From assembly GCA_044892505.1 (NCBI GenBank), contig CM097882.1:280674001-280738000 (forward strand): 64,000 bases of DNA, in the 5' to 3' direction. Source of the DNA: Schmidtea nova. Taxonomy: Eukaryota. The position numbers and the translations under genes are program-made. Of this stretch, positions 1 through 64,000 are shown one piece after another; position 1 is the first letter of the stretch; each line of letters starts with the position of its first letter. The notes below the pieces were generated by a model, which ran no database searches, was not told the DNA's origin, and worked only from the letters and a program-made list of their open reading frames with translations.

Positions 1-349
1 ATAGATTTCACCCTTTCTTCACTTTTGAAATAAAATATCGATTTTGCACTGACAAATCAATATTATCCATAACTTGCATTTAAATTGCCACAAGTTCCAT
101 TTGAAAAAACCTTTAATAGCACAAATTCGGCACTTTGTATGCGGTTCAGAAATCAGACCAAATTATATGGAAATAGATGTATGAAACGTTTAACTGCCTC
201 TTTTCGTTTAATTATATTTTGATATAATAATTATATTATTATTCCGTTAATAAACTAGTAATATTTCAAATAAATAAAAAGAATATTTTCACCAGTATTA
301 TTTGTATTGGTAATTATATATTAAACATCTTTAAAAAAGTTGTATAACA

Positions 350-1369
350 ATGACAGTTCAAATGTGTAAATTAGTAAATGATAGAAAACAAAACGCACGA
401 AAACGCAAAGTAAGATATAATGTAGTGTCCGTTGACATCAAATACAGCCAAAAGGCATATGAAAATGTTTATAACCCAGATAAAAAGAAACCCGTTTCTT
501 TAATAAATCATGGGGTCAACTGTTACATGAATGCTGCTATCCAAAGCATTTTCTCTCCCCTACAAATAATTTACGAAAGAGAGAATAATATGACTATTCC
601 CACTGACTGTGGAGCTTTGACTTTACTAAAGAATATAATGAACTCATATGAAAATGAAGAAAGATTTTCTATTCGAGAATGCATTTCTAAATTTTCAAAG
701 CTCGAGTATTTCGGTAGTCAATTGTCCTGGAATCAACAGGAAGATGCTCATGAGTTTCTGAATAGTTTTCTTGACAAGTTGTCTAAAGAATTAGGGCGGG
801 TGTCGAAATCGTTCAAAATGCCTTTTGAGAGTGCACATGATTCTCGTTTCTATTGCGACAATTGTGGAAAGTCCAATACTTCAGAAGGTTCGAGTCTGGT
901 AAAAGAGAAAGTTCTATTTGTGGATGTTGGAAAGAACATGAATGAAATGGTTGAGAAATCAACAAGTAACAAGGTCAATGGATTTAGTTGTGAAAATTGT
1001 GGAACAAAAGGTACAGCCAGTAACAAAACGGTCTTTTCAGAACTACCAGAATTTTTAATTATTTGCATCAAAAGATTTACCTATGCTTCGTATTATCAAA
1101 ATGCAAAGAATTCAGAAAAAATTGAAATTGAAGAATATATTTCTGTTCCACTTCAACAAAACGACACAGTCAAACAAACACAGTATGAATTAATTTCAAT
1201 AGTAAATCATCACGGAGGGCTTTTTGGGGGGCATTATAATAATTTTTTAAAACATCAGAACGTTTGGTACTCGGCAGACGATGAATCTGTAACTGAGGTT
1301 AGCTTAGATAAGGCCGTGAGCAGTTCTGAATGTTCATGTTATATACAAGTTTATGCAAGGAGAAACTAG
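350..1369 (+). CDS. Ubiquitin-specific protease (peptidase C19), minimal catalytic domain, array copy 1
   Basis: Cys box LINHGVNCYMNAAIQ (C58), QQEDAHEFL box, two CxxC zinc-ribbon pairs (CDNC, CENC), LPEFLIICIKRF, His box HHGGLFGGHY (H295), WYSADD (D310). Basic N-terminal RKQNARKRK. No intron. Confidence 0.95.
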   Translation: MTVQMCKLVNDRKQNARKRKVRYNVVSVDIKYSQKAYENVYNPDKKKPVSLINHGVNCYMNAAIQSIFSPLQIIYERENNMTIPTDCGALTLLKNIMNSYENEERFSIRECISKFSKLEYFGSQLSWNQQEDAHEFLNSFLDKLSKELGRVSKSFKMPFESAHDSRFYCDNCGKSNTSEGSSLVKEKVLFVDVGKNMNEMVEKSTSNKVNGFSCENCGTKGTASNKTVFSELPEFLIICIKRFTYASYYQNAKNSEKIEIEEYISVPLQQNDTVKQTQYELISIVNHHGGLFGGHYNNFLKHQNVWYSADDESVTEVSLDKAVSSSECSCYIQVYARRN

Positions 1370-1962
1370 TGTAATTTATTTTATAATAATTATTAAAATT
1401 ATGGGGTTTGTTTATATTTCAATTTATAATATCGATTTTATTATTGCAATTAATTTGTATGTATTTATCTATAATTTACAAATAATAAATTATAAAAATA
1501 TAATTTTTTCAAATTTATTTAAAGTAAATAATAAAATTAGTAATATTAACGCTGTTTGTATATTAATTATTAAATAAATGCTATTAATTGTATTTGTGTA
1601 AATTGGTTTCAATCTTTGCTTTTTTAACTTTTATTAGTATTTGAGAAATAGTAAATCTTTTCTGCAATTTTTTTATAATTGTTTCTTATTTAAATTGTAC
1701 ACTTTATTCTCTTAAAAATTATATTCACATTTCTAAAGTGCAATAATATTTTTAATCTATTAACAAACGATGAATATTCTAGGCAATGCATTTGATTTGC
1801 TTAAAATATCTGATTTCAACAAATCAAATCATTCGATGAAAAACTATAAATACTGAATACTAACTTCAATTTGTCTTTATTAGTAAACTGAATTTGATTA
1901 AGACGAATAAACTGAAAACTTTGACTAGTGAAATTATATATTATTAATATATAATTTCTATA

Positions 1963-1995
<33 letters not shown>
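1963..1995 (+). repeat. (ATT)n microsatellite in each array unit (representative copy)
   Basis: 11 ATT triplets here. 12 in 2646-bp units and 10 (with one ATA interruption) in 2640-bp units, which accounts for the unit-length differences. Confidence 0.9.
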
Positions 1996-1999
<4 letters not shown>

Positions 2000-2992
2000 T
2001 ATTTAAAAAGAATAATATTTTACTATTATTAATATATAATTATATTTTAACATTTGATTTGTTTAATGGACTTTTTAACTAAATGTTAATATTTTGATTG
2101 AATTATTATACGCATTGCACTAATTATAAATATCAATGAACTCAAAGTGCTTCAAAAGTAAGTAAACTTGGTTAATAGTGACTAGTAATATAATTACTGA
2201 TAGATTCTTGTAGAGGATTTTATGCCGCGTCTGATGATGTGAAAATGAATTCGATAGGCCGTTTCAATTGGTGGAAAAAGTGAAAATTTTGAAAAACAAT
2301 AATTTCGTAATTATTTGCATGTTTTCTTGTAAAGTAGAATATTTCAAGTCAAACAAACTAGGTTTGGGTGAAATCTGTTGAGTAGATTGATGAGAAAATT
2401 AAAAAGAGTTAAAAGTGGTAATAGTCACAAATTTCATAATTCAATTTTCAGGCTTTATGATTTTCATCACAAAACTCGAAATTTGATGAAAAATGATAAA
2501 ATTTAGGAAACAATTTCATTTTATGTTTTTGCACCTTTGTGTGCACCTTAAATTAAATAATATTTAAGAGACTAAATATTTACCCTGAAAATAGTGTGCT
2601 GATAATTTATCATCAAAATACCTAAAATTACTACTAGTAAAACATAGATTTCACCCTTTCTTCACTTTTGAAATAAAATATCGATTTTGCACTGACAAAT
2701 CAATATTATCCATAACTTGCATTTAAATTGCCACAAGTTCCATTTGAAAAAACCTTTAATAGCACAAATTCGGCACTTTGTATGCGGTTCAGAAATCAGA
2801 CCAAATTATATGGAAATAGATGTATGAAACGTTTAACTGCCTCTTTTCGTTTAATTATATTTTGATATAATAATTATATTATTATTCCGTTAATAAACTA
2901 GTAATATTTCAAATAAATAAAAAGAATATTTTCACCAGTATTATTTGTATTGGTAATTATATATTAAACATCTTTAAAAAAGTTGTATAACA

Positions 2993-4012
2993 ATGACAGT
3001 TCAAATGTGTAAATTAGTAAATGATAGAAAACAAAACGCACGAAAACGCAAAGTAAGATATAATGTAGTGTCCGTTGACATCAAATACAGCCAAAAGGCA
3101 TATGAAAATGTTTATAACCCAGATAAAAAGAAACCCGTTTCTTTAATAAATCATGGGGTCAACTGTTACATGAATGCTGCTATCCAAAGCATTTTCTCTC
3201 CCCTACAAATAATTTACGAAAGAGAGAATAATATGACTATTCCCACTGACTGTGGAGCTTTGACTTTACTAAAGAATATAATGAACTCATATGAAAATGA
3301 AGAAAGATTTTCTATTCGAGAATGCATTTCTAAATTTTCAAAGCTCGAGTATTTCGGTAGTCAATTGTCCTGGAATCAACAGGAAGATGCTCATGAGTTT
3401 CTGAATAGTTTTCTTGACAAGTTGTCTAAAGAATTAGGGCGGGTGTCGAAATCGTTCAAAATGCCTTTTGAGAGTGCACATGATTCTCGTTTCTATTGCG
3501 ACAATTGTGGAAAGTCCAATACTTCAGAAGGTTCGAGTCTGGTAAAAGAGAAAGTTCTATTTGTGGATGTTGGAAAGAACATGAATGAAATGGTTGAGAA
3601 ATCAACAAGTAACAAGGTCAATGGATTTAGTTGTGAAAATTGTGGAACAAAAGGTACAGCCAGTAACAAAACGGTCTTTTCAGAACTACCAGAATTTTTA
3701 ATTATTTGCATCAAAAGATTTACCTATGCTTCGTATTATCAAAATGCAAAGAATTCAGAAAAAATTGAAATTGAAGAATATATTTCTGTTCCACTTCAAC
3801 AAAACGACACAGTCAAACAAACACAGTATGAATTAATTTCAATAGTAAATCATCACGGAGGGCTTTTTGGGGGGCATTATAATAATTTTTTAAAACATCA
3901 GAACGTTTGGTACTCGGCAGACGATGAATCTGTAACTGAGGTTAGCTTAGATAAGGCCGTGAGCAGTTCTGAATGTTCATGTTATATACAAGTTTATGCA
4001 AGGAGAAACTAG
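2993..4012 (+). CDS. USP deubiquitinase, array copy 2
   Basis: Protein identical to copy 1. Confidence 0.95.
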   Translation: MTVQMCKLVNDRKQNARKRKVRYNVVSVDIKYSQKAYENVYNPDKKKPVSLINHGVNCYMNAAIQSIFSPLQIIYERENNMTIPTDCGALTLLKNIMNSYENEERFSIRECISKFSKLEYFGSQLSWNQQEDAHEFLNSFLDKLSKELGRVSKSFKMPFESAHDSRFYCDNCGKSNTSEGSSLVKEKVLFVDVGKNMNEMVEKSTSNKVNGFSCENCGTKGTASNKTVFSELPEFLIICIKRFTYASYYQNAKNSEKIEIEEYISVPLQQNDTVKQTQYELISIVNHHGGLFGGHYNNFLKHQNVWYSADDESVTEVSLDKAVSSSECSCYIQVYARRN

Positions 4013-4605
4013 TGTAATTTATTTTATAATAATTATTAAAATTATGGGGTTTGTTTATATTTCAATTTATAATATCGATTTTATTATTGCAATTAATTTG
4101 TATGTATTTATCTATAATTTACAAATAATAAATTATAAAAATATAATTTTTTCAAATTTATTTAAAGTAAATAATAAAATTAGTAATATTAACGCTGTTT
4201 GTATATTAATTATTAAATAAATGCTATTAATTGTATTTGTGTAAATTGGTTTCAATCTTTGCTTTTTTAACTTTTATTAGTATTTGAGAAATAGTAAATC
4301 TTTTCTGCAATTTTTTTATAATTGTTTCTTATTTAAATTGTACACTTTATTCTCTTAAAAATTATATTCACATTTCTAAAGTGCAATAATATTTTTAATC
4401 TATTAACAAACGATGAATATTCTAGGCAATGCATTTGATTTGCTTAAAATATCTGATTTCAACAAATCAAATCATTCGATGAAAAACTATAAATACTGAA
4501 TACTAACTTCAATTTGTCTTTATTAGTAAACTGAATTTGATTAAGACGAATAAACTGAAAACTTTGACTAGTGAAATTATATATTATTAATATATAATTT
4601 CTATA

Positions 4606-4645
<40 letters not shown>

Positions 4646-5638
4646 TATTTAAAAAGAATAATATTTTACTATTATTAATATATAATTATATTTTAACATT
4701 TGATTTGTTTAATGGACTTTTTAACTAAATGTTAATATTTTGATTGAATTATTATACGCATTGCACTAATTATAAATATCAATGAACTCAAAGTGCTTCA
4801 AAAGTAAGTAAACTTGGTTAATAGTGACTAGTAATATAATTACTGATAGATTCTTGTAGAGGATTTTATGCCGCGTCTGATGATGTGAAAATGAATTCGA
4901 TAGGCCGTTTCAATTGGTGGAAAAAGTGAAAATTTTGAAAAACAATAATTTCGTAATTATTTGCATGTTTTCTTGTAAAGTAGAATATTTCAAGTCAAAC
5001 AAACTAGGTTTGGGTGAAATCTGTTGAGTAGATTGATGAGAAAATTAAAAAGAGTTAAAAGTGGTAATAGTCACAAATTTCATAATTCAATTTTCAGGCT
5101 TTATGATTTTCATCACAAAACTCGAAATTTGATGAAAAATGATAAAATTTAGGAAACAATTTCATTTTATGTTTTTGCACCTTTGTGTGCACCTTAAATT
5201 AAATAATATTTAAGAGACTAAATATTTACCCTGAAAATAGTGTGCTGATAATTTATCATCAAAATACCTAAAATTACTACTAGTAAAACATAGATTTCAC
5301 CCTTTCTTCACTTTTGAAATAAAATATCGATTTTGCACTGACAAATCAATATTATCCATAACTTGCATTTAAATTGCCACAAGTTCCATTTGAAAAAACC
5401 TTTAATAGCACAAATTCGGCACTTTGTATGCGGTTCAGAAATCAGACCAAATTATATGGAAATAGATGTATGAAACGTTTAACTGCCTCTTTTCGTTTAA
5501 TTATATTTTGATATAATAATTATATTATTATTCCGTTAATAAACTAGTAATATTTCAAATAAATAAAAAGAATATTTTCACCAGTATTATTTGTATTGGT
5601 AATTATATATTAAACATCTTTAAAAAAGTTGTATAACA

Positions 5639-6658
5639 ATGACAGTTCAAATGTGTAAATTAGTAAATGATAGAAAACAAAACGCACGAAAACGCAAAGT
5701 AAGATATAATGTAGTGTCCGTTGACATCAAATACAGCCAAAAGGCATATGAAAATGTTTATAACCCAGATAAAAAGAAACCCGTTTCTTTAATAAATCAT
5801 GGGGTCAACTGTTACATGAATGCTGCTATCCAAAGCATTTTCTCTCCCCTACAAATAATTTACGAAAGAGAGAATAATATGACTATTCCCACTGACTGTG
5901 GAGCTTTGACTTTACTAAAGAATATAATGAACTCATATGAAAATGAAGAAAGATTTTCTATTCGAGAATGCATTTCTAAATTTTCAAAGCTCGAGTATTT
6001 CGGTAGTCAATTGTCCTGGAATCAACAGGAAGATGCTCATGAGTTTCTGAATAGTTTTCTTGACAAGTTGTCTAAAGAATTAGGGCGGGTGTCGAAATCG
6101 TTCAAAATGCCTTTTGAGAGTGCACATGATTCTCGTTTCTATTGCGACAATTGTGGAAAGTCCAATACTTCAGAAGGTTCGAGTCTGGTAAAAGAGAAAG
6201 TTCTATTTGTGGATGTTGGAAAGAACATGAATGAAATGGTTGAGAAATCAACAAGTAACAAGGTCAATGGATTTAGTTGTGAAAATTGTGGAACAAAAGG
6301 TACAGCCAGTAACAAAACGGTCTTTTCAGAACTACCAGAATTTTTAATTATTTGCATCAAAAGATTTACCTATGCTTCGTATTATCAAAATGCAAAGAAT
6401 TCAGAAAAAATTGAAATTGAAGAATATATTTCTGTTCCACTTCAACAAAACGACACAGTCAAACAAACACAGTATGAATTAATTTCAATAGTAAATCATC
6501 ACGGAGGGCTTTTTGGGGGGCATTATAATAATTTTTTAAAACATCAGAACGTTTGGTACTTGGCAGACGATGAATCTGTAACTGAGGTTAGCTTAGATAA
6601 GGCCGTGAGCAGTTCTGAATGTTCATGTTATATACAAGTTTATGCAAGGAGAAACTAG
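5639..6658 (+). CDS. USP deubiquitinase, array copy 3 (S308L variant)
   Basis: As copy 1 except TCG>TTG at 6561 (WYLADD). Confidence 0.95.
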   Translation: MTVQMCKLVNDRKQNARKRKVRYNVVSVDIKYSQKAYENVYNPDKKKPVSLINHGVNCYMNAAIQSIFSPLQIIYERENNMTIPTDCGALTLLKNIMNSYENEERFSIRECISKFSKLEYFGSQLSWNQQEDAHEFLNSFLDKLSKELGRVSKSFKMPFESAHDSRFYCDNCGKSNTSEGSSLVKEKVLFVDVGKNMNEMVEKSTSNKVNGFSCENCGTKGTASNKTVFSELPEFLIICIKRFTYASYYQNAKNSEKIEIEEYISVPLQQNDTVKQTQYELISIVNHHGGLFGGHYNNFLKHQNVWYLADDESVTEVSLDKAVSSSECSCYIQVYARRN

Positions 6659-7251
6659 TGTAATTTATTTTATAATAATTATTAAAATTATGGGGTTTGT
6701 TTATATTTCAATTTATAATATCGATTTTATTATTGCAATTAATTTGTATGTATTTATCTATAATTTACAAATAATAAATTATAAAAATATAATTTTTTCA
6801 AATTTATTTAAAGTAAATAATAAAATTAGTAATATTAACGCTGTTTGTATATTAATTATTAAATAAATGCTATTAATTGTATTTGTGTAAATTGGTTTCA
6901 ATCTTTGCTTTTTTAACTTTTATTAGTATTTGAGAAATAGTAAATCTTTTCTGCAATTTTTTTATAATTGTTTCTTATTTAAATTGTACACTTTATTCTC
7001 TTAAAAATTATATTCACATTTCTAAAGTGCAATAATATTTTTAATCTATTAACAAACGATGAATATTCTAGGCAATGCATTTGATTTGCTTAAAATATCT
7101 GATTTCAACAAATCAAATCATTCGATGAAAAACTATAAATACTGAATACTAACTTCAATTTGTCTTTATTAGTAAACTGAATTTGATTAAGACGAATAAA
7201 CTGAAAACTTTGACTAGTGAAATTATATATTATTAATATATAATTTCTATA

Positions 7252-7288
<37 letters not shown>

Positions 7289-8281
7289 TATTTAAAAAGA
7301 ATAATATTTTACTATTATTAATATATAATTATATTTTAACATTTGATTTGTTTAATGGACTTTTTAACTAAATGTTAATATTTTGATTGAATTATTATAC
7401 GCATTGCACTAATTATAAATATCAATGAACTCAAAGTGCTTCAAAAGTAAGTAAACTTGGTTAATAGTGACTAGTAATATAATTACTGATAGATTCTTGT
7501 AGAGGATTTTATGCCGCGTCTGATGATGTGAAAATGAATTCGATAGGCCGTTTCAATTGGTGGAAAAAGTGAAAATTTTGAAAAACAATAATTTCGTAAT
7601 TATTTGCATGTTTTCTTGTAAAGTAGAATATTTCAAGTCAAACAAACTAGGTTTGGGTGAAATCTGTTGAGTAGATTGATGAGAAAATTAAAAAGAGTTA
7701 AAAGTGGTAATAGTCACAAATTTCATAATTCAATTTTCAGGCTTTATGATTTTCATCACAAAACTCGAAATTTGATGAAAAATGATAAAATTTAGGAAAC
7801 AATTTCATTTTATGTTTTTGCACCTTTGTGTGCACCTTAAATTAAATAATATTTAAGAGACTAAATATTTACCCTGAAAATAGTGTGCTGATAATTTATC
7901 ATCAAAATACCTAAAATTACTACTAGTAAAACATAGATTTCACCCTTTCTTCACTTTTGAAATAAAATATCGATTTTGCACTGACAAATCAATATTATCC
8001 ATAACTTGCATTTAAATTGCCACAAGTTCCATTTGAAAAAACGTTTAATAGCACAAATTCGGCACTTTGTATGCGGTTCAGAAATCAGACCAAATTATAT
8101 GGAAATAGATGTATGAAACGTTTAACTGCCTCTTTTCGTTTAATTATATTTTGATATAATAATTATATTATTATTCCGTTAATAAACTAGTAATATTTCA
8201 AATAAATAAAAAGAATATTTTCACCAGTATTATTTGTATTGGTAATTATATATTAAACATCTTTAAAAAAGTTGTATAACA

Positions 8282-9301
8282 ATGACAGTTCAAATGTGTA
8301 AATTAGTAAATGATAGAAAACAAAACGCACGAAAACGCAAAGTAAGATATAATGTAGTGTCCGTTGACATCAAATACAGCCAAAAGGCATATGAAAATGT
8401 TTATAACCCAGATAAAAAGAAACCCGTTTCTTTAATAAATCATGGGGTCAACTGTTACATGAATGCTGCTATCCAAAGCATTTTCTCTCCCCTACAAATA
8501 ATTTACGAAAGAGAGAATAATATGACTATTCCCACTGACTGTGGAGCTTTGACTTTACTAAAGAATATAATGAACTCATATGAAAATGAAGAAAGATTTT
8601 CTATTCGAGAATGCATTTCTAAATTTTCAAAGCTCGAGTATTTCGGTAGTCAATTGTCCTGGAATCAACAGGAAGATGCTCATGAGTTTCTGAATAGTTT
8701 TCTTGACAAGTTGTCTAAAGAATTAGGGCGGGTGTCGAAATCGTTCAAAATGCCTTTTGAGAGTGCACATGATTCTCGTTTCTATTGCGACAATTGTGGA
8801 AAGTCCAATACTTCAGAAGGTTCGAGTCTGGTAAAAGAGAAAGTTCTATTTGTGGATGTTGGAAAGAACATGAATGAAATGGTTGAGAAATCAACAAGTA
8901 ACAAGGTCAATGGATTTAGTTGTGAAAATTGTGGAACAAAAGGTACAGCCAGTAACAAAACGGTCTTTTCAGAACTACCAGAATTTTTAATTATTTGCAT
9001 CAAAAGATTTACCTATGCTTCGTATTATCAAAATGCAAAGAATTCAGAAAAAATTGAAATTGAAGAATATATTTCTGTTCCACTTCAACAAAACGACACA
9101 GTCAAACAAACACAGTATGAATTAATTTCAATAGTAAATCATCACGGAGGGCTTTTTGGGGGGCATTATAATAATTTTTTAAAACATCAGAACGTTTGGT
9201 ACTCGGCAGACGATGAATCTGTAACTGAGGTTAGCTTAGATAAGGCCGTGAGCAGTTCTGAATGTTCATGTTATATACAAGTTTATGCAAGGAGAAACTA
9301 G
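8282..9301 (+). CDS. USP deubiquitinase, array copy 4
   Basis: Protein identical to copy 1. Confidence 0.95.
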   Translation: MTVQMCKLVNDRKQNARKRKVRYNVVSVDIKYSQKAYENVYNPDKKKPVSLINHGVNCYMNAAIQSIFSPLQIIYERENNMTIPTDCGALTLLKNIMNSYENEERFSIRECISKFSKLEYFGSQLSWNQQEDAHEFLNSFLDKLSKELGRVSKSFKMPFESAHDSRFYCDNCGKSNTSEGSSLVKEKVLFVDVGKNMNEMVEKSTSNKVNGFSCENCGTKGTASNKTVFSELPEFLIICIKRFTYASYYQNAKNSEKIEIEEYISVPLQQNDTVKQTQYELISIVNHHGGLFGGHYNNFLKHQNVWYSADDESVTEVSLDKAVSSSECSCYIQVYARRN

Positions 9302-9894: not shown

Positions 9895-9931
<37 letters not shown>

Positions 9932-12537: not shown

Positions 12538-12577
<40 letters not shown>

Positions 12578-38726: not shown

Positions 38727-38754
38727 AGAAAACAAAAATAGAATTGTTCATAAA

Positions 38755-41991: not shown

Positions 41992-42031
<40 letters not shown>

Positions 42032-44637: not shown

Positions 44638-44677
<40 letters not shown>

Positions 44678-47283: not shown

Positions 47284-47323
<40 letters not shown>

Positions 47324-49929: not shown

Positions 49930-49969
<40 letters not shown>

Positions 49970-52575: not shown

Positions 52576-52615
<40 letters not shown>

Positions 52616-54628: not shown

Positions 54629-55221
54629 TGTAATTTATTTTATAATAATTATTAAAATTATGGGGTTTGTTTATATTTCAATTTATAATATCGATTTTAT
54701 TATTGCAATTAATTTGTATGTATTTATCTATAATTTACAAATAATAAATTATAAAAATATAATTTTTTCAAATTTATTTAAAGTAAATAATAAAATTAGT
54801 AATATTAACGCTGTTTGTATATTAATTATTAAATAAATGCTATTAATTGTATTTGTGTAAATTGGTTTCAATCTTTGCTTTTTTAACTTTTATTAGTATT
54901 TGAGAAATAGTAAATCTTTTCTGCAATTTTTTTATAATTGTTTCTTATTTAAATTGTACACTTTATTCTCTTAAAAATTATATTCACATTTCTAAAGTGC
55001 AATAATATTTTTAATCTATTAACAAACGATGAATATTCTAGGCAATGCATTTTATTTGCTTAAAATATCTGATTTCAACAAATCAAATCATTCGATGAAA
55101 AACTATAAATACTGAATACTAACTTCAATTTGTCTTTATTAGTAAACTGAATTTGATTAAGACGAATAAACTGAAAACTTTGACTAGTGAAATTATATAT
55201 TATTAATATATAATTTCTATA

Positions 55222-55261
<40 letters not shown>

Positions 55262-56254
55262 TATTTAAAAAGAATAATATTTTACTATTATTAATATATA
55301 ATTATATTTTAACATTTGATTTGTTTAATGGACTTTTTAACTAAATGTTAATATTTTGATTGAATTATTATACGCATTGCACTAATTATAAATATCAATG
55401 AACTCAAAGTGCTTCAAAAGTAAGTAAACTTGGTTAATAGTGACTAGTAATATAATTACTGATAGATTCTTGTAGAGGATTTTATGCCGCGTCTGATGAT
55501 GTGAAAATGAATTCGATAGGCCGTTTCAATTGGTGGAAAAAGTGAAAATTTTGAAAAACAATAATTTCGTAATTATTTGCATGTTTTCTTGTAAAGTAGA
55601 ATATTTCAAGTCAAACAAACTAGGTTTGGGTGAAATCTGTTGAGTAGATTGATGAGAAAATTAAAAAGAGTTAAAAGTGGTAATAGTCACAAATTTCATA
55701 ATTCAATTTTCAGGCTTTATGATTTTCATCACAAAACTCGAAATTTGATGAAAAATGATAAAATTTAGGAAACAATTTCATTTTATGTTTTTGCACCTTT
55801 GTGTGCACCTTAAATTAAATAATATTTAAGAGACTAAATATTTACCCTGAAAATAGTGTGCTGATAATTTATCATCAAAATACCTAAAATTACTACTAGT
55901 AAAACATAGATTTCACCCTTTCTTCACTTTTGAAATAAAATATCGATTTTGCACTGACAAATCAATATTATCCATAACTTGCATTTAAATTGCCACAAGT
56001 TCCATTTGAAAAAACGTTTAATAGCACAAATTCGGCACTTTGTATGCGGTTCAGAAATCAGACCAAATTATATGGAAATAGATGTATGAAACGTTTAACT
56101 GCCTCTTTTCGTTTAATTATATTTTGATATAATAATTATATTATTATTCCGTTAATAAACTAGTAATATTTCAAATAAATAAAAAGAATATTTTCACCAG
56201 TATTATTTGTATTGGTAATTATATATTAAACATCTTTAAAAAAGTTGTATAACA

Positions 56255-57274
56255 ATGACAGTTCAAATGTGTAAATTAGTAAATGATAGAAAACAAAACG
56301 CACGAAAACGCAAAGTAAGATATAATGTAGTGTCCGTTGACATCAAATACAGCCAAAAGGCATATGAAAATGTTTATAACCCAGATAAAAAGAAACCCGT
56401 TTCTTTAATAAATCATGGGGTCAACTGTTACATGAATGCTGCTATCCAAAGCATTTTCTCTCCCCTACAAATAATTTACGAAAGAGAGAATAATATGACT
56501 ATTCCCACTGACTGTGGAGCTTTGACTTTACTAAAGAATATAATGAACTCATATGAAAATGAAGAAAGATTTTCTATTCGAGAATGCATTTCTAAATTTT
56601 CAAAGCTCGAGTATTTCGGTAGTCAATTGTCCTGGAATCAACAGGAAGATGCTCATGAGTTTCTGAATAGTTTTCTTGACAAGTTGTCTAAAGAATTAGG
56701 GCGGGTGTCGAAATCGTTCAAAATGCCTTTTGAGAGTGCACATGATTCTCGTTTCTATTGCGACAATTGTGGAAAGTCCAATACTTCAGAAGGTTCGAGT
56801 CTGGTAAAAGAGAAAGTTCTATTTGTGGATGTTGGAAAGAACATGAATGAAATGGTTGAGAAATCAACAAGTAACAAGGTCAATGGATTTAGTTGTGAAA
56901 ATTGTGGAACAAAAGGTACAGCCAGTAACAAAACGGTCTTTTCAGAACTACCAGAATTTTTAATTATTTGCATCAAAAGATTTACCTATGCTTCGTATTA
57001 TCAAAATGCAAAGAATTCAGAAAAAATTGAAATTGAAGAATATATTTCTGTTCCACTTCAACAAAACGACACAGTCAAACAAACACAGTATGAATTAATT
57101 TCAATAGTAAATCATCACGGAGGGCTTTTTGGGGGGCATTATAATAATTTTTTAAAACATCAGAACGTTTGGTACTCGGCAGACGATGAATCTGTAACTG
57201 AGGTTAGCTTAGATAAGGCCGTGAGCAGTTCTGAATGTTCATGTTATATACAAGTTTATGCAAGGAGAAACTAG
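56255..57274 (+). CDS. USP deubiquitinase, array copy 16
   Basis: Protein identical to copy 1. Confidence 0.95.
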   Translation: MTVQMCKLVNDRKQNARKRKVRYNVVSVDIKYSQKAYENVYNPDKKKPVSLINHGVNCYMNAAIQSIFSPLQIIYERENNMTIPTDCGALTLLKNIMNSYENEERFSIRECISKFSKLEYFGSQLSWNQQEDAHEFLNSFLDKLSKELGRVSKSFKMPFESAHDSRFYCDNCGKSNTSEGSSLVKEKVLFVDVGKNMNEMVEKSTSNKVNGFSCENCGTKGTASNKTVFSELPEFLIICIKRFTYASYYQNAKNSEKIEIEEYISVPLQQNDTVKQTQYELISIVNHHGGLFGGHYNNFLKHQNVWYSADDESVTEVSLDKAVSSSECSCYIQVYARRN

Positions 57275-57867
57275 TGTAATTTATTTTATAATAATTATTA
57301 AAATTATGGGGTTTGTTTATATTTCAATTTATAATATCGATTTTATTATTGCAATTAATTTGTATGTATTTATCTATAATTTACAAATAATAAATTATAA
57401 AAATATAATTTTTTCAAATTTATTTAAAGTAAATAATAAAATTAGTAATATTAACGCTGTTTGTATATTAATTATTAAATAAATGCTATTAATTGTATTT
57501 GTGTAAATTGGTTTCAATCTTTGCTTTTTTAACTTTTATTAGTATTTGAGAAATAGTAAATCTTTTCTGCAATTTTTTTATAATTGTTTCTTATTTAAAT
57601 TGTACACTTTATTCTCTTAAAAATTATATTCACATTTCTAAAGTGCAATAATATTTTTAATCTATTAACAAACGATGAATATTCTAGGCAATGCATTTTA
57701 TTTGCTTAAAATATCTGATTTCAACAAATCAAATCATTCGATGAAAAACTATAAATACTGAATACTAACTTCAATTTGTCTTTATTAGTAAACTGAATTT
57801 GATTAAGACGAATAAACTGAAAACTTTGACTAGTGAAATTATATATTATTAATATATAATTTCTATA

Positions 57868-57907
<40 letters not shown>

Positions 57908-58900
57908 TATTTAAAAAGAATAATATTTTACTATTATTAATATATAATTATATTTTAACATTTGATTTGTTTAATGGACTTTTTAACTAAATGTTAATAT
58001 TTTGATTGAATTATTATACGCATTGCACTAATTATAAATATCAATGAACTCAAAGTGCTTCAAAAGTAAGTAAACTTGGTTAATAGTGACTAGTAATATA
58101 ATTACTGATAGATTCTTGTAGAGGATTTTATGCCGCGTCTGATGATGTGAAAATGAATTCGATAGGCCGTTTCAATTGGTGGAAAAAGTGAAAATTTTGA
58201 AAAACAATAATTTCGTAATTATTTGCATGTTTTCTTGTAAAGTAGAATATTTCAAGTCAAACAAACTAGGTTTGGGTGAAATCTGTTGAGTAGATTGATG
58301 AGAAAATTAAAAAGAGTTAAAAGTGGTAATAGTCACAAATTTCATAATTCAATTTTCAGGCTTTATGATTTTCATCACAAAACTCGAAATTTGATGAAAA
58401 ATGATAAAATTTAGGAAACAATTTCATTTTATGTTTTTGCACTTTTGTGTGCACCTTAAATTAAATAATATTTAAGAGACTAAATATTTACCCTGAAAAT
58501 AGTGTGCTGATAATTTATCATCAAAATACCTAAAATTACTACTAGTAAAACATAGATTTCACCCTTTCTTCACTTTTGAAATAAAATATCGATTTTGCAC
58601 TGACAAATCAATATTATCCATAACTTGCATTTAAATTGCCACAAGTTCCATTTGAAAAAACGTTTAATAGCACAAATTCGGCACTTTGTATGCGGTTCAG
58701 AAATCAGACCAAATTATATGGAAATAGATGTATGAAACGTTTAACTGCCTCTTTTCGTTTAATTATATTTTGATATAATAATTATATTATTATTCCGTTA
58801 ATAAACTAGTAATATTTCAAATAAATAAAAAGAATATTTTCACCAGTATTATTTGTATTGGTAATTATATATTAAACATCTTTAAAAAAGTTGTATAACA

Positions 58901-59920
58901 ATGACAGTTCAAATGTGTAAATTAGTAAATGATAGAAAACAAAACGCACGAAAACGCAAAGTAAGATATAATGTAGTGTCCGTTGACATCAAATACAGCC
59001 AAAAGGCATATGAAAATGTTTATAACCCAGATAAAAAGAAACCCGTTTCTTTAATAAATCATGGGGTCAACTGTTACATGAATGCTGCTATCCAAAGCAT
59101 TTTCTCTCCCCTACAAATAATTTACGAAAGAGAGAATAATATGACTATTCCCACTGACTGTGGAGCTTTGACTTTACTAAAGAATATAATGAACTCATAT
59201 GAAAATGAAGAAAGATTTTCTATTCGAGAATGCATTTCTAAATTTTCAAAGCTCGAGTATTTCGGTAGTCAATTGTCCTGGAATCAACAGGAAGATGCTC
59301 ATGAGTTTCTGAATAGTTTTCTTGACAAGTTGTCTAAAGAATTAGGGCGGGTGTCGAAATCGTTCAAAATGCCTTTTGAGAGTGCACATGATTCTCGTTT
59401 CTATTGCGACAATTGTGGAAAGTCCAATACTTCAGAAGGTTCGAGTCTGGTAAAAGAGAAAGTTCTATTTGTGGATGTTGGAAAGAACATGAATGAAATG
59501 GTTGAGAAATCAACAAGTAACAAGGTCAATGGATTTAGTTGTGAAAATTGTGGAACAAAAGGTACAGCCAGTAACAAAACGGTCTTTTCAGAACTACCAG
59601 AATTTTTAATTATTTGCATCAAAAGATTTACCTATGCTTCGTATTATCAAAATGCAAAGAATTCAGAAAAAATTGAAATTGAAGAATATATTTCTGTTCC
59701 ACTTCAACAAAACGACACAGTCAAACAAACACAGTATGAATTAATTTCAATAGTAAATCATCACGGAGGGCTTTTTGGGGGGCATTATAATAATTTTTTA
59801 AAACATCAGAACGTTTGGTACTCGGCAGACGATGAATCTGTAACTGAGGTTAGCTTAGATAAGGCCGTGAGCAGTTCTGAATGTTCATGTTATATACAAG
59901 TTTATGCAAGGAGAAACTAG
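58901..59920 (+). CDS. USP deubiquitinase, array copy 17
   Basis: Protein identical to copy 1. Confidence 0.95.
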   Translation: MTVQMCKLVNDRKQNARKRKVRYNVVSVDIKYSQKAYENVYNPDKKKPVSLINHGVNCYMNAAIQSIFSPLQIIYERENNMTIPTDCGALTLLKNIMNSYENEERFSIRECISKFSKLEYFGSQLSWNQQEDAHEFLNSFLDKLSKELGRVSKSFKMPFESAHDSRFYCDNCGKSNTSEGSSLVKEKVLFVDVGKNMNEMVEKSTSNKVNGFSCENCGTKGTASNKTVFSELPEFLIICIKRFTYASYYQNAKNSEKIEIEEYISVPLQQNDTVKQTQYELISIVNHHGGLFGGHYNNFLKHQNVWYSADDESVTEVSLDKAVSSSECSCYIQVYARRN

Positions 59921-60513
59921 TGTAATTTATTTTATAATAATTATTAAAATTATGGGGTTTGTTTATATTTCAATTTATAATATCGATTTTATTATTGCAA
60001 TTAATTTGTATGTATTTATCTATAATTTACAAATAATAAATTATAAAAATATAATTTTTTCAAATTTATTTAAAGTAAATAATAAAATTAGTAATATTAA
60101 CGCTGTTTGTATATTAATTATTAAATAAATGCTATTAATTGTATTTGTGTAAATTGGTTTCAATCTTTGCTTTTTTAACTTTTATTAGTATTTGAGAAAT
60201 AGTAAATCTTTTCTGCAATTTTTTTATAATTGTTTCTTATTTAAATTGTACACTTTATTCTCTTAAAAATTATATTCACATTTCTAAAGTGCAATAATAT
60301 TTTTAATCTATTAACAAACGATGAATATTCTAGGCAATGCATTTTATTTGCTTAAAATATCTGATTTCAACAAATCAAATCATTCGATGAAAAACTATAA
60401 ATACTGAATACTAACTTCAATTTGTCTTTATTAGTAAACTGAATTTGATTAAGACGAATAAACTGAAAACTTTGACTAGTGAAATTATATATTATTAATA
60501 TATAATTTCTATA

Positions 60514-60553
<40 letters not shown>

Positions 60554-61546
60554 TATTTAAAAAGAATAATATTTTACTATTATTAATATATAATTATATT
60601 TTAACATTTGATTTGTTTAATGGACTTTTTAACTAAATGTTAATATTTTGATTGAATTATTATACGCATTGCACTAATTATAAATATCAATGAACTCAAA
60701 GTGCTTCAAAAGTAAGTAAACTTGGTTAATAGTGACTAGTAATATAATTACTGATAGATTCTTGTAGAGGATTTTATGCCGCGTCTGATGATGTGAAAAT
60801 GAATTCGATAGGCCGTTTCAATTGGTGGAAAAAGTGAAAATTTTGAAAAACAATAATTTCGTAATTATTTGCATGTTTTCTTGTAAAGTAGAATATTTCA
60901 AGTCAAACAAACTAGGTTTGGGTGAAATCTGTTGAGTAGATTGATGAGAAAATTAAAAAGAGTTAAAAGTGGTAATAGTCACAAATTTCATAATTCAATT
61001 TTCAGGCTTTATGATTTTCATCACAAAACTCGAAATTTGATGAAAAATGATAAAATTTAGGAAACAATTTCATTTTATGTTTTTGCACTTTTGTGTGCAC
61101 CTTAAATTAAATAATATTTAAGAGACTAAATATTTACCCTGAAAATAGTGTGCTGATAATTTATCATCAAAATACCTAAAATTACTACTAGTAAAACATA
61201 GATTTCACCCTTTCTTCACTTTTGAAATAAAATATCGATTTTGCACTGACAAATCAATATTATCCATAACTTGCATTTAAATTGCCACAAGTTCCATTTG
61301 AAAAAACGTTTAATAGCACAAATTCGGCACTTTGTATGCGGTTCAGAAATCAGACCAAATTATATGGAAATAGATGTATGAAACGTTTAACTGCCTCTTT
61401 TCGTTTAATTATATTTTGATATAATAATTATATTATTATTCCGTTAATAAACTAGTAATATTTCAAATAAATAAAAAGAATATTTTCACCAGTATTATTT
61501 GTATTGGTAATTATATATTAAACATCTTTAAAAAAGTTGTATAACA

Positions 61547-62566
61547 ATGACAGTTCAAATGTGTAAATTAGTAAATGATAGAAAACAAAACGCACGAAAA
61601 CGCAAAGTAAGATATAATGTAGTGTCCGTTGACATCAAATACAGCCAAAAGGCATATGAAAATGTTTATAACCCAGATAAAAAGAAACCCGTTTCTTTAA
61701 TAAATCATGGGGTCAACTGTTACATGAATGCTGCTATCCAAAGCATTTTCTCTCCCCTACAAATAATTTACGAAAGAGAGAATAATATGACTATTCCCAC
61801 TGACTGTGGAGCTTTGACTTTACTAAAGAATATAATGAACTCATATGAAAATGAAGAAAGATTTTCTATTCGAGAATGCATTTCTAAATTTTCAAAGCTC
61901 GAGTATTTCGGTAGTCAATTGTCCTGGAATCAACAGGAAGATGCTCATGAGTTTCTGAATAGTTTTCTTGACAAGTTGTCTAAAGAATTAGGGCGGGTGT
62001 CGAAATCGTTCAAAATGCCTTTTGAGAGTGCACATGATTCTCGTTTCTATTGCGACAATTGTGGAAAGTCCAATACTTCAGAAGGTTCGAGTCTGGTAAA
62101 AGAGAAAGTTCTATTTGTGGATGTTGGAAAGAACATGAATGAAATGGTTGAGAAATCAACAAGTAACAAGGTCAATGGATTTAGTTGTGAAAATTGTGGA
62201 ACAAAAGGTACAGCCAGTAACAAAACGGTCTTTTCAGAACTACCAGAATTTTTAATTATTTGCATCAAAAGATTTACCTATGCTTCGTATTATCAAAATG
62301 CAAAGAATTCAGAAAAAATTGAAATTGAAGAATATATTTCTGTTCCACTTCAACAAAACGACACAGTCAAACAAACACAGTATGAATTAATTTCAATAGT
62401 AAATCATCACGGAGGGCTTTTTGGGGGGCATTATAATAATTTTTTAAAACATCAGAACGTTTGGTACTCGGCAGACGATGAATCTGTAACTGAGGTTAGC
62501 TTAGATAAGGCCGTGAGCAGTTCTGAATGTTCATGTTATATACAAGTTTATGCAAGGAGAAACTAG
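61547..62566 (+). CDS. USP deubiquitinase, array copy 18
   Basis: Protein identical to copy 1. Confidence 0.95.
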   Translation: MTVQMCKLVNDRKQNARKRKVRYNVVSVDIKYSQKAYENVYNPDKKKPVSLINHGVNCYMNAAIQSIFSPLQIIYERENNMTIPTDCGALTLLKNIMNSYENEERFSIRECISKFSKLEYFGSQLSWNQQEDAHEFLNSFLDKLSKELGRVSKSFKMPFESAHDSRFYCDNCGKSNTSEGSSLVKEKVLFVDVGKNMNEMVEKSTSNKVNGFSCENCGTKGTASNKTVFSELPEFLIICIKRFTYASYYQNAKNSEKIEIEEYISVPLQQNDTVKQTQYELISIVNHHGGLFGGHYNNFLKHQNVWYSADDESVTEVSLDKAVSSSECSCYIQVYARRN

Positions 62567-63159
62567 TGTAATTTATTTTATAATAATTATTAAAATTATG
62601 GGGTTTGTTTATATTTCAATTTATAATATCGATTTTATTATTGCAATTAATTTGTATGTATTTATCTATAATTTACAAATAATAAATTATAAAAATATAA
62701 TTTTTTCAAATTTATTTAAAGTAAATAATAAAATTAGTAATATTAACGCTGTTTGTATATTAATTATTAAATAAATGCTATTAATTGTATTTGTGTAAAT
62801 TGGTTTCAATCTTTGCTTTTTTAACTTTTATTAGTATTTGAGAAATAGTAAATCTTTTCTGCAATTTTTTTATAATTGTTTCTTATTTAAATTGTACACT
62901 TTATTCTCTTAAAAATTATATTCACATTTCTAAAGTGCAATAATATTTTTAATCTATTAACAAACGATGAATATTCTAGGCAATGCATTTTATTTGCTTA
63001 AAATATCTGATTTCAACAAATCAAATCATTCGATGAAAAACTATAAATACTGAATACTAACTTCAATTTGTCTTTATTAGTAAACTGAATTTGATTAAGA
63101 CGAATAAACTGAAAACTTTGACTAGTGAAATTATATATTATTAATATATAATTTCTATA

Positions 63160-63199
<40 letters not shown>

Positions 63200-64000
63200 T
63201 ATTTAAAAAGAATAATATTTTACTATTATTAATATATAATTATATTTTAACATTTGATTTGTTTAATGGACTTTTTAACTAAATGTTAATATTTTGATTG
63301 AATTATTATACGCATTGCACTAATTATAAATATCAATGAACTCAAAGTGCTTCAAAAGTAAGTAAACTTGGTTAATAGTGACTAGTAATATAATTACTGA
63401 TAGATTCTTGTAGAGGATTTTATGCCGCGTCTGATGATGTGAAAATGAATTCGATAGGCCGTTTCAATTGGTGGAAAAAGTGAAAATTTTGAAAAACAAT
63501 AATTTCGTAATTATTTGCATGTTTTCTTGTAAAGTAGAATATTTCAAGTCAAACAAACTAGGTTTGGGTGAAATCTGTTGAGTAGATTGATGAGAAAATT
63601 AAAAAGAGTTAAAAGTGGTAATAGTCACAAATTTCATAATTCAATTTTCAGGCTTTATGATTTTCATCACAAAACTCGAAATTTGATGAAAAATGATAAA
63701 ATTTAGGAAACAATTTCATTTTATGTTTTTGCACCTTTGTGTGCACCTTAAATTAAATAATATTTAAGAGACTAAATATTTACCCTGAAAATAGTGTGCT
63801 GATAATTTATCATCAAAATACCTAAAATTACTACTAGTAAAACATAGATTTCACCCTTTCTTCACTTTTGAAATAAAATATCGATTTTGCACTGACAAAT
63901 CAATATTATCCATAACTTGCATTTAAATTGCCACAAGTTCCATTTGAAAAAACGTTTAATAGCACAAATTCGGCACTTTGTATGCGGTTCAGAAATCAGA

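What the first reader, a model, noticed from the sequence alone, without database searches (positions are those of the whole stretch)
1..64000. Megasatellite of at least 18 near-identical, intronless, catalytic-domain-only deubiquitinase genes
Seen: a 2.64-kb unit with one intact 339-aa USP ORF repeated through the whole window, with only two amino-acid variants. Known: mammalian USP17/DUB genes are also small, intronless USPs amplified in a tandem megasatellite (RS447). Inference: this is an independent amplification with the same architecture in an AT-rich non-mammalian host, suggesting selection for dosage or a burst of expression (germline, early embryo or a parasite effector). Lacking introns in a genome that clearly uses them, it may have a retrogene or horizontal/viral origin.
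Basis: partly seen in the sequence, partly recalled or inferred. Interest (0 to 1): 0.75.

Follow-up and report, generated by a model that had tools for sequence, protein, structure and literature searches.

The report
Tandem deubiquitinase gene array, Maverick-interrupted
The window holds a real head-to-tail array of 18 almost identical, single-exon genes for a small ubiquitin-specific protease, most likely from a planarian flatworm. The array is split in the middle by a 16-kb virus-like Maverick/Polinton insertion, and it parallels the mammalian USP17 gene megasatellite without being a member of that family.

Summary
There are 18 intact 339-aa ORFs on the + strand, with a period of 2640-2646 bp. 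Units are at least 99.5% identical, and there are only two amino-acid variants (N298S in 5 copies, S308L in 1).

The array does not fill the window. It forms two blocks of 9 copies, separated by a 16,242-bp Maverick/Polinton at 24069-40310. That element has a 6-bp target-site duplication, about 1.7-kb terminal inverted repeats, and genes for pPolB, rve+chromo integrase, A32-like ATPase and adenain-like protease. The N gap lies inside this element, at the 3' tail of pPolB, and touches no USP copy.

The protein is a complete USP catalytic domain. The Cys/His/Asp triad and four zinc cysteines are conserved, and the AF2 model has pLDDT 89. It belongs to a small, well-separated clade of 348-426-aa USPs whose only named member is from Schmidtea mediterranea.

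Two other clade members sit on contigs that close on themselves (units of 2313 and 2882 bp), so head-to-tail repetition recurs in the family.

I found no viral relatives closer than about 25% identity and no retrogene marks. Grouping with USP17 was not recovered in a tree that lacked reference USPs.

Verdict: a real gene-bearing macrosatellite, analogous to RS447/USP17. Expression, enzyme activity and true copy number remain untested.

The parts
1..24068 (+). Array block 1: the tail of one spacer plus USP units 1-9. Unit 9 is cut 62 bp before the next ATG by the insertion.
350..1369 (+). USP ORF copy 1 (339 aa, reference sequence)
2993..4012 (+). USP ORF copy 2 (reference)
5639..6658 (+). USP ORF copy 3 (S308L)
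8282..9301 (+). USP ORF copy 4 (reference)
10925..11944 (+). USP ORF copy 5 (reference)
13571..14590 (+). USP ORF copy 6 (N298S; unit haplotype B, 2640 bp)
16211..17230 (+). USP ORF copy 7 (N298S; haplotype B)
18851..19870 (+). USP ORF copy 8 (N298S; haplotype B)
21491..22510 (+). USP ORF copy 9 (N298S; haplotype B). Its spacer carries the insertion.
24063..24068 (.). Left copy of the 6-bp target-site duplication AATATT
24069..40310 (-). Maverick/Polinton-type virus-like element, 16,242 bp including the estimated gap. Most of its genes are on the - strand.
24069..25834 (.). Left terminal inverted repeat. It starts with AG and contains 37-nt and 13-nt tandem repeats.
26104..26414 (.). Assembly gap (311 N, length estimated) at the 3' tail of the pPolB gene. 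It was not filled.
26415..29797 (-). Protein-primed family-B DNA polymerase, main open frame (1127 codons, still open at the gap). Homology to relatives ends 31-35 codons before the gap.
29799..30386 (-). 195-aa ORF in another frame. Its first ~50-78 residues match the N-termini of pPolB relatives, so the polymerase gene is split at about 29798 by a frame change or an intron. It was left as found.
31471..32230 (-). Adenain-like cysteine protease in two ORFs (31922-32230 and 31471-31890)
32373..33593 (-). 406-aa ORF, 63% identical to the syntenic gene of the related element L091. It is a candidate major capsid protein; its fold was not tested.
33981..35027 (-). 348-aa ORF of unknown function, with three paralogous counterparts in L091
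34973..36027 (-). Integrase in two ORFs: the rve core (35596-36027) and the C-terminal part with a chromodomain (34973-35560). A probable 46-nt GT..AG intron lies at 35639-35594.
36661..37290 (-). A32/FtsK-like packaging ATPase
37381..37851 (+). TBP-domain ORF carried by the element (PF00352, E = 3.6e-16), conserved in L091
38605..40310 (.). Right terminal inverted repeat
40311..40316 (.). Right copy of the 6-bp target-site duplication AATATT
40311..64000 (+). Array block 2: the last 68 bp of unit 9's spacer, USP units 10-17, and unit 18 up to the window end
40379..41398 (+). USP ORF copy 10 (reference). The Maverick end lies 68 bp upstream of its ATG.
43025..44044 (+). USP ORF copy 11 (reference)
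45671..46690 (+). USP ORF copy 12 (reference)
48317..49336 (+). USP ORF copy 13 (N298S)
50963..51982 (+). USP ORF copy 14 (reference)
53609..54628 (+). USP ORF copy 15 (reference)
56255..57274 (+). USP ORF copy 16 (reference)
58901..59920 (+). USP ORF copy 17 (reference)
61547..62566 (+). USP ORF copy 18 (reference)

Best explanation
The window shows part of a chromosomal gene-bearing macrosatellite, most likely from a triclad planarian. Each 2.64-kb unit holds one complete single-exon gene for a minimal ubiquitin-specific protease (peptidase family C19), followed by about 1.6 kb of AT-rich spacer with no other recognisable gene or RNA.

Shown:
- The protein has a full USP catalytic domain, with a conserved catalytic triad and a zinc ribbon.
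- The units are kept almost identical, and their few variants fall in contiguous blocks.
- The protein belongs to a small, separate clade of short USPs.
- At least two other clade members are also repeated head to tail.
- A young Maverick/Polinton inserted into one spacer, which marks that position as a unique place in the array.

Inferred:
- The array grew, and is kept uniform, by unequal crossing-over and gene conversion between neighbouring units.
- Each unit carries its own promoter and polyadenylation signal.
- The copies make an active deubiquitinase, so copy number sets the dose.
- A basic N-terminal stretch (residues 12-22) in the disordered first 36 residues may act as a nuclear localisation signal.
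- The likeness to mammalian USP17/RS447 is convergent, not inherited.
For: Array and uniformity:
- 18 intact ORFs with a period of 2640-2646 bp.
- 16 variable columns in 2646; units 1-5, 6-9 and 10-17 form three haplotype blocks. The length differences come from an (ATT)n microsatellite.

Enzyme:
- Pfam UCH E = 1.5e-37 over residues 51-335.
- C58, H295, D311 and the zinc cysteines C169/C172/C214/C217 are invariant in the 7-sequence family alignment and at least 90% conserved among 61 USPs.
- The AF2 model has pLDDT 89.2 and pTM 0.84, with only residues 1-36 disordered.
- Foldseek finds USP catalytic domains at TM about 0.7 and E about 1e-21.
- Both amino-acid variants lie at positions that vary within the family.

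Family:
- The word search found 6 close relatives and then a drop from 560 to 117 bits.
- The exhaustive HMMER search found only 27 proteins at E <= 1e-30, of which 9 are single-domain family representatives of 348-426 aa (4 already known from the word search).
- The clade has SH-aLRT 99 on a stem of 1.37 changes per site.
- The only named member is S. mediterranea UZP64864.1.

Tandem repeats elsewhere in the family:
- L002 has identical first and last 141 nt (a k = 141 assembly), giving a unit of 2313 bp. L003, from another sample, maps across that junction at 99.8%.
- L007 has identical first and last 30 nt (k-1 of Logan), giving a unit of 2882 bp. L006, from another assembly, maps across that junction at 99.9%.

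No other cargo in the unit:
- No Rfam family and no tRNA, and spacer ORFs are at most 74 aa.
- Spacers are not conserved between family loci.

Insertion:
- A 6-bp duplication, long inverted ends, and an exact empty site recovered from the flanks.
Against: - I have no expression data, no activity data and no read depth.
- Within the array, ORF and spacer are equally invariant (Fisher p = 0.33), and both coding changes are non-synonymous. The array itself therefore shows no signature of purifying selection; only the cross-family conservation does.
- The host is inferred from a single named relative and from base composition. The exact protein is not on record in the contig collection.
- Contigs that close on themselves could also be circular molecules rather than tandem repeats.
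- Several family members (L001, L009, L092, L093) show no sign of repetition.
- The two halves of the window are joined across a scaffold gap.
Confidence: 0.72

Rival explanations
1. The array is an assembly artefact: a few real copies were over-expanded, or reads were mis-joined, by the assembler.
For: - The units are 99.5-100% identical, which is hard for assemblers.
- The window contains a scaffold gap.
- Even the human RS447 array was unresolved in reference assemblies (PMC2874809).
Against: - Variants are not scattered. They form three contiguous haplotype blocks with three distinct unit lengths.
- One unit carries a unique 16-kb insertion with a clean target-site duplication.
- Short-read assemblies of relatives independently collapse into self-closing contigs, as true repeats do.
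Confidence: 0.08
2. The array is a recently expanded but functionally idle satellite. The ORFs are intact only because amplification was too recent for decay, and the array is silenced.
For: - There is no excess constraint on the ORF relative to the spacer.
- Both coding changes are non-synonymous.
- A mobile element has been tolerated 68 bp upstream of one copy's ATG.
Against: - The family keeps its catalytic and zinc residues across members only 37-70% identical.
- Other members repeated in tandem also have intact ORFs in several independent samples.
- All 18 copies are intact.
Confidence: 0.15
3. The gene came from a virus or by horizontal transfer, or the repeat is a concatemer of a small circular episome rather than a chromosomal array.
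For: - The gene is intronless and consists of the catalytic domain only.
- Relatives assemble as 2.3-2.9-kb self-closing contigs.
- A virus-like element lies in the array.
Against: - The best hit in IMG/VR is 23% identical.
- Giant-virus USPs are at most 25% identical, no closer than cellular USPs.
- The Maverick and its relative L091 carry no USP.
- The unit has no replication or capsid gene.
- Haplotype blocks and a fixed insertion fit a chromosomal array.
Confidence: 0.05
4. The clade is a divergent orthologue of the USP17/36/42 group, so the tandem habit is inherited from an ancient unstable locus rather than convergent.
For: - With the family profile, the best solved structure by sequence is USP36: 87.6 bits, collinear over the whole domain, sharing the QEDAHEFL motif.
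- Among the top hits of the exhaustive search are vertebrate gene models that fuse tandem USP17-like copies.
Against: - USP15 scores almost the same as USP36 (85 bits).
- The multi-copy vertebrate models score high only because 3-12 domains are summed.
- In the tree the two USP17-like sequences do not group with the clade.
- Structure search gives no preference (USP46, USP30, Ubp8 and USP12 rank before USP36).
- USP17 is 530 aa (1593-bp ORF), against 339 aa here.
Confidence: 0.15

Closest known systems
Human RS447 megasatellite carrying USP17/DUB-3 (and rodent DUB arrays)
   Same: - A head-to-tail repeat of a kilobase-scale unit.
- Each unit holds one uninterrupted ORF for a USP-type deubiquitinase.
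- Tens of near-identical copies, most of them intact (PMC2874809).
- More similarity within a species than between species.
   Different: - The unit is 2.64 kb, against 4746 bp.
- The ORF is 1020 bp (339 aa, catalytic domain only), against 1593 bp.
- The host is an invertebrate, probably a planarian.
- The protein sits in its own clade and was not recovered with USP17-like sequences.
- Copy-number polymorphism and inducible expression are known for USP17 but untested here.
Schmidtea mediterranea 'ubiquitin specific protease 8' (UZP64864.1, P0002) and its unnamed relatives
   Same: - The same clade (SH-aLRT 99) and 52% identity.
- The same domain plan, catalytic residues and zinc cysteines.
- The relatives whose DNA is in hand (none for UZP64864.1 itself) are AT-rich, uninterrupted ORFs.
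   Different: - These relatives are 394-426 aa, with a non-conserved N-terminal extension that the window protein lacks.
- The name 'USP 8' is the depositor's; orthology to human USP8 was not seen here.
- The nearest relative of the window protein is instead P0001 (350 aa, 71% identical, UniParc only).
Maverick/Polinton virus-like transposons (for the insertion)
   Same: - Size 15-20 kb, long terminal inverted repeats starting with AG, and a 6-bp target-site duplication.
- Genes for pPolB, rve integrase, A32-like ATPase and adenain-like protease.
- These features match the descriptions in PMC4028283.
   Different: - It carries a TBP-domain gene, and its relative L091 also carries a Bcl-2-domain gene.
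- The capsid genes were not verified by fold.
- Three genes are read in two pieces each.

Membership tests
Ubiquitin-specific protease (peptidase C19, Pfam UCH PF00443) | A match to the family profile above the curated cut-off over the whole catalytic domain | tested here: met
   130.1 bits against a cut-off of 23.9; residues 51-335 match profile positions 3-254 of 254
Ubiquitin-specific protease (peptidase C19, Pfam UCH PF00443) | A Cys box with the catalytic Cys, a His box with the catalytic His, and the third Asp/Asn | tested here: met
   C58, H295 and D311 are invariant in A1. C58 and H295 are invariant and D311 is at least 90% conserved in the 61-sequence alignment
Ubiquitin-specific protease (peptidase C19, Pfam UCH PF00443) | The thumb-palm-fingers fold | tested here: met
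   The AF2 model has pLDDT 89.2. Foldseek matches USP46, USP30, Ubp8, USP12, USP36 and USP2 at E about 1e-21 to 1e-19 and TM about 0.7
Ubiquitin-specific protease (peptidase C19, Pfam UCH PF00443) | Hydrolysis of ubiquitin conjugates | not testable with these tools
   This needs an assay with Ub-AMC or a Ub-based probe
DUB/USP17 subfamily | Phylogenetic grouping with vertebrate USP17/DUB sequences | tested here: inconclusive
   The tree does not group them, but it lacks the reference USPs. The profile scores USP36 highest (87.6 bits), only narrowly ahead of USP15 (85 bits)
DUB/USP17 subfamily | A protein of about 530 aa with a C-terminal extension beyond the catalytic domain | tested here: not met
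   The protein is 339 aa and the UCH domain ends at residue 335. The USP17 ORF is 1593 bp
DUB/USP17 subfamily | An uninterrupted ORF inside a tandemly repeated unit | tested here: met
Gene-bearing macrosatellite / megasatellite | A kilobase-scale unit repeated head to tail many times with high identity | tested here: met
   At least 18 units of 2640-2646 bp, 99.5-100% identical
Gene-bearing macrosatellite / megasatellite | Copy number that varies between individuals | not testable with these tools
   This needs population read depth or long reads
Processed retrogene | A poly(A) remnant and flanking direct repeats, plus an intron-bearing parent gene | tested here: inconclusive
   There is no poly(A) tract or flanking duplication in the unit, and no parent was identified. 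Tandem amplification would erase such marks, and all relatives with DNA in hand are also uninterrupted
Maverick/Polinton | Terminal inverted repeats and a 6-bp target-site duplication | tested here: met
   The TIRs are about 1.7 kb and begin with AG. AATATT is duplicated at 24063-24068 and 40311-40316
Maverick/Polinton | Protein-primed family-B DNA polymerase | tested here: met
   Relatives 45-57% identical carry PF03175 and PF02945. The window ORF itself has only weak direct profile hits
Maverick/Polinton | Retroviral-type (rve) integrase, packaging ATPase and adenain-like protease | tested here: met
   rve 34.8 bits (cut-off 32.6); Peptidase_C5 26.8 bits (cut-off 21.3); Pox_A32 28.6 bits (cut-off 22.8); a weak chromodomain hit
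Maverick/Polinton | Double and single jelly-roll capsid proteins | not tested
   The candidate ORFs 32373-33593 and 33590-33988 have no profile hit. They are conserved in L091. No fold was predicted for them

The most novel reading that the evidence does not exclude
A flatworm-specific clade of minimal, single-exon USPs is habitually kept as multi-copy head-to-tail arrays. Three separate members are now seen this way, with units of 2.3, 2.6 and 2.9 kb, in two subclades. This would be a second, independent case beside vertebrate USP17 in which a small deubiquitinase gene becomes a macrosatellite. It would point to a general cause, such as selection for a burst of DUB dose (for example in germline, embryo or stem cells, or in a conflict with viruses or mobile elements), or a sequence-intrinsic tendency of such genes to amplify.
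Probability: 0.3. Interest if true: 0.6.

Novelty: new member of a known kind. Interest (0 to 1): 0.42.

Why it matters
Protein-coding macrosatellites are few, and they are poorly resolved in assemblies. The best-known one that encodes an enzyme is USP17/RS447 in mammals.

A second, unrelated lineage in which a small USP gene has become a high-copy tandem array offers a natural comparison. It bears on whether such arrays exist for gene dosage or arise from locus instability. If the host is a planarian, RNAi, in situ hybridisation and single-cell atlases could address that question directly.

The Maverick insertion gives a unique landmark for typing the array. It also shows that the element family, which carries a TBP-domain gene, was mobile recently in this genome.

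None of this changes how USPs are understood to work.

Tried and rejected
- Other cargo in the unit. Rfam (gathering thresholds) and ARAGORN over the whole window found no RNA gene, so the unit is not a disguised snRNA, SL-RNA, 5S or tRNA repeat. The spacer has only ORFs of at most 74 aa and an (ATT)n microsatellite.
- Exact look-up of the 339-aa protein in the contig collection: not on record.
- Viral origin. The IMG/VR scan gave one hit at 23% identity, and BFVD fold search gave only giant-virus USPs at 25% or less.
- JGI metagenome scan: only generic USPs at 30% or less; no clade members, so nothing on tandem structure.
- Conservation of spacers between family loci: none beyond low-complexity matches.
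- Circular or tandem signature in L001, L009, L092 and L093: none. L004 and L005 gave only ambiguous low-complexity end matches.
- Assigning a USP subfamily by structure: Foldseek does not discriminate between USP46, USP30, Ubp8, USP12 and USP36.
- PDB sequence search with the polymerase ORF: no hit.
- Literature. No paper in the searchable library links planarians with a USP tandem array or USP17.
- One call failed on a frame with stops and was resent without those stretches.
- The split Maverick genes (integrase, protease, polymerase) were searched piece by piece by reference.

Full report
OBSERVATION

The window holds 18 ORFs of exactly 339 aa on the + strand. Start-to-start spacing is 2640, 2643 or 2646 bp. 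Across 18 x 1020 coding nucleotides only two positions vary, and both changes are non-synonymous: A893G (N298S, five copies) and C923T (S308L, one copy).

Seventeen complete units align over 2646 columns with 16 variable columns. Pairwise identity is 99.5-100%. The three unit lengths come from an (ATT)n microsatellite in the spacer. The first 349 and last 2454 bases of the window are spacer and unit sequence of the same repeat, so the array reaches both edges and 18 is a minimum. This is far beyond chance.

Copies 1-9 end at 24068 and copies 10-18 begin at 40311, with 16,242 bp of unrelated sequence between them.

THE GAP (tested first, as asked)

- The 311 N at 26104-26414 lie inside the inserted element and touch no USP unit.
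- The '1234-aa ORF' that the ORF list shows across the gap is N read as X. The true open frame runs from 29797 down to 26415 on the - strand (1127 codons) and is still open at the gap.
- 311 is not a multiple of three, and its length is only an estimate.
- On the far side no frame stays open for more than about 54 codons, and none resembles a polymerase (E > 0.6).
- Alignments to relatives end 31-35 codons before the gap, where the relatives have 0-34 (one: 65) residues left. The conserved body of the polymerase is therefore complete, and only a non-conserved tail and the stop codon are hidden.
- Continuity and frame across the gap cannot be established from the sequence.
- Both sides nonetheless appear to belong to one insertion. 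The same 6-bp duplication sits at both ends, the inverted ends are near-identical, and the two flanks close to an exact 2640-bp unit of haplotype B.

THE GENE

- Pfam UCH (PF00443) matches residues 51-335 at E = 1.5e-37, across the whole profile. The protein is a catalytic domain with a 50-residue N-terminal tail.
- An in-frame stop lies six codons upstream of the ATG. The nearest relative, P0001, starts at the homologous methionine. The ORF is therefore a complete coding sequence without coding introns. Introns in the untranslated regions cannot be excluded.
- C58 (Cys box), H295 (His box), D311 and the four zinc-ribbon cysteines C169/C172/C214/C217 are invariant in the family alignment. They are at least 90% conserved among 61 USPs.
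- An AlphaFold2 model built on that 61-sequence alignment has mean pLDDT 89.2 and pTM 0.84. Only residues 1-36 are disordered.
- Foldseek finds USP catalytic domains at E about 1e-21 and TM about 0.7: USP46, USP30, Ubp8, USP12, USP35, USP36 and USP2.
- Both amino-acid variants fall at positions that vary within the family. Position 298 is N/C/T/S and position 308 is S/T/K.
- The tail contains a basic run (residues 12-22). I read it, by inference only, as a possible nuclear localisation signal.

THE FAMILY AND THE HOST

- The word-indexed search found six relatives at 40-71% identity. The profile then dropped from 560 bits or more to 117 bits.
- The exhaustive HMMER search of 1.84 billion representatives found only 27 proteins at E <= 1e-30. 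I used this costly search because the claims of a restricted family and of no viral or parent relatives rest on absence.
- Nine of the 27 are single-domain family representatives of 348-426 aa; P0145, P0146, P0147, P0148 and P0150 are new.
- The other high scorers are vertebrate gene models (pocket gopher, pigeons, teleosts) with 3-12 matched stretches. These are annotations that fuse tandem USP17-like copies, so their totals are sums over many domains.
- A maximum-likelihood tree (quick search, LG+C20, 32 rows) puts the 12 family rows in one clade with SH-aLRT 99, on a stem of 1.37 changes per site. The window protein is sister to P0001, and that pair is sister to the two S. mediterranea-type sequences. 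The two USP17-like rows lie elsewhere. The tree lacks the reference USPs, so it does not identify the sister group.
- With the family profile, the best solved structure by sequence is USP36 (87.6 bits, collinear over the whole domain), narrowly ahead of USP15 (85 bits). That is a weak lead towards the USP17/36/42 group and nothing more.
- The only named member is 'ubiquitin specific protease 8' of Schmidtea mediterranea (UZP64864.1). Three others are UniParc-only entries of one batch.
- This one named relative, the 23-33% GC content and the AT-rich relatives (21-32% GC) together make a triclad planarian the most likely host. That is an inference. The exact protein is not on record in the contig collection.

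TANDEM REPETITION ELSEWHERE IN THE FAMILY

- Contig L002 (P0005, a k = 141 assembly) has identical first and last 141 bases, implying a 2313-bp unit. L003, from a different run, maps across that junction at 99.8%.
- Contig L007 (P0145, Logan) has identical first and last 30 bases (k-1), implying a 2882-bp unit. The independent scaffold L006 maps across that junction at 99.9% and begins a second unit.
- These two members lie in a different subclade from the window gene.
- Head-to-tail repetition, or less likely a circular form, is therefore seen in three members.
- L001, L009, L092 and L093 show no such sign. L004 and L005 are ambiguous.
- Every family locus with DNA in hand is an uninterrupted ORF.
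- Spacers are not conserved between members.

HOW THE ARRAY IS MAINTAINED

- The variants form contiguous blocks. Units 1-5, 6-9 (2640 bp; five linked differences including N298S) and 10-17 make up the three blocks, and unit 13 alone in the third block shares N298S.
- That pattern is expected from local duplication and unequal exchange between neighbours. This reading is an inference.
- The ORF (2 of 1020 sites variable) is no more constrained than the spacer (8 of 1626 plus one indel; Fisher p = 0.33). The uniformity therefore reflects recent amplification or homogenisation, not selection that can be seen inside the array.
- Evidence for long-term constraint comes only from conservation across the family.

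WHAT ELSE IS IN THE UNIT

Nothing recognisable was found. There is no Rfam family and no tRNA. Spacer ORFs are at most 74 aa, and there is no structured repeat apart from the microsatellite. Canonical poly(A) signals lie 23-200 nt after the stop codon.

THE INSERTION

- Alignment of both flanks to a reference unit places the insertion at 24069-40310, with the hexamer AATATT duplicated on either side.
- The ends are inverted repeats of about 1.7 kb that begin with AG. Their inner 627 nt are 100% identical. They differ mainly in the copy number of internal 13-nt and 37-nt tandem repeats.
- The polymerase ORF has many relatives at 45-57% identity that carry PF03175 (family-B polymerase, organellar and viral) and PF02945 (endonuclease VII).
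- The other genes are an rve integrase core, a chromodomain piece, an A32-like ATPase and an adenain-like protease.
- The element is collinear, gene for gene, with a 16.3-kb metagenomic contig, L091.
- It is therefore a Maverick/Polinton, and the near-identical inverted ends suggest a young insertion.
- Three genes are read in two pieces each:
  - The integrase has a probable 46-nt GT..AG intron at 35639-35594.
  - The protease is split between 31922 and 31890.
  - The polymerase changes frame near 29798, where the upstream 195-aa ORF matches the N-termini of relatives.
- I searched the pieces separately by reference, built no joined, consensus or repaired version, and say nothing about how any break could be undone.
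- The element sits in the spacer 68 bp upstream of the ATG of copy 10, which remains intact.

COMPARISON WITH WHAT IS KNOWN

- The closest known system in architecture is the human RS447 megasatellite. It has a 4746-bp unit, a 1593-bp USP17 ORF, 20-103 copies and mostly intact ORFs, with independent expansions in different mammals (PMC2874809).
- The present array works like that: one uninterrupted USP gene per unit, with many near-identical copies.
- It is not a member of the USP17 family by the tests I could run. The protein is shorter and lacks the C-terminal extension. Phylogenetic grouping was not recovered, although that test is inconclusive.
- I found no paper on a planarian USP array in the searchable library.

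VERDICT

This is a real, cleanly resolved gene-bearing macrosatellite of a lineage-restricted minimal USP. It is convergent in architecture with USP17/RS447 and is interrupted by a young Maverick.

- The analogy and the independence of the amplification are supported.
- A viral or horizontal origin is not supported.
- A retrogene origin, dosage selection, expression, enzyme activity and copy number remain untested.

I rate it a new member of a known kind, of moderate interest. The interest is raised somewhat by the finding that tandem repetition recurs in the family.

Noticed in passing
window 37381-37851 (+), and L091 12382-13431: The Maverick carries a TBP-domain ORF (PF00352, E = 3.6e-16; one repeat seen). 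It is 53% identical to the syntenic gene of the related metagenomic element L091, which also has a Bcl-2-domain gene next to it. A TATA-binding-protein-like gene as conserved cargo of a Maverick lineage is unusual.
   Followed up: partly
window 24255-24396, 24708-24978, 39455-39685, 39966-40144: The terminal inverted repeats hold arrays of a 13-nt repeat containing TGACTCA (about 16-21 copies) and a 37-nt repeat whose junctions form TGACGTCA (about 4-5 copies). These are the consensus AP-1 and CRE sites (from my own knowledge). They may act as promoter or enhancer arrays for the element.
   Followed up: no
window 25241-25684 (-) and 38755-39198 (+): An identical 147-aa ORF lies inside each terminal inverted repeat, within the 627-nt stretch that is 100% identical. 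It has no significant family hit, only weak ICAT and FGF matches below the cut-offs.
   Followed up: partly
window 33981-35027 (-), and L091 6951-10020: The 348-aa ORF of unknown function has three tandem paralogues (32-38% identity) in the related element L091 but only one copy here.
   Followed up: no
proteins P0144, P0149, P0151, P0152, P0153, P0159: Annotated 'proteins' of 966-3205 aa in pocket gopher, pigeons and teleost fishes contain 2-12 USP domains each. They look like gene models that fuse tandem USP17-like copies, so USP arrays appear widespread in vertebrates and are mis-annotated.
   Followed up: partly
window 13571-24068 versus 40311-64000: The Maverick lies exactly at the boundary between unit haplotype B (units 6-9) and haplotype C (units 10-17). 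This fits the insertion acting as a barrier to exchange between the two sides, but it could be coincidence.
   Followed up: no
window 25836-26103: The 268 nt between the left inverted repeat and the gap contain a short imperfect repeat (read on the - strand as '...ENISSKNQFVQ...' twice). It has no similarity to the polymerase relatives, and its nature is unknown.
   Followed up: partly
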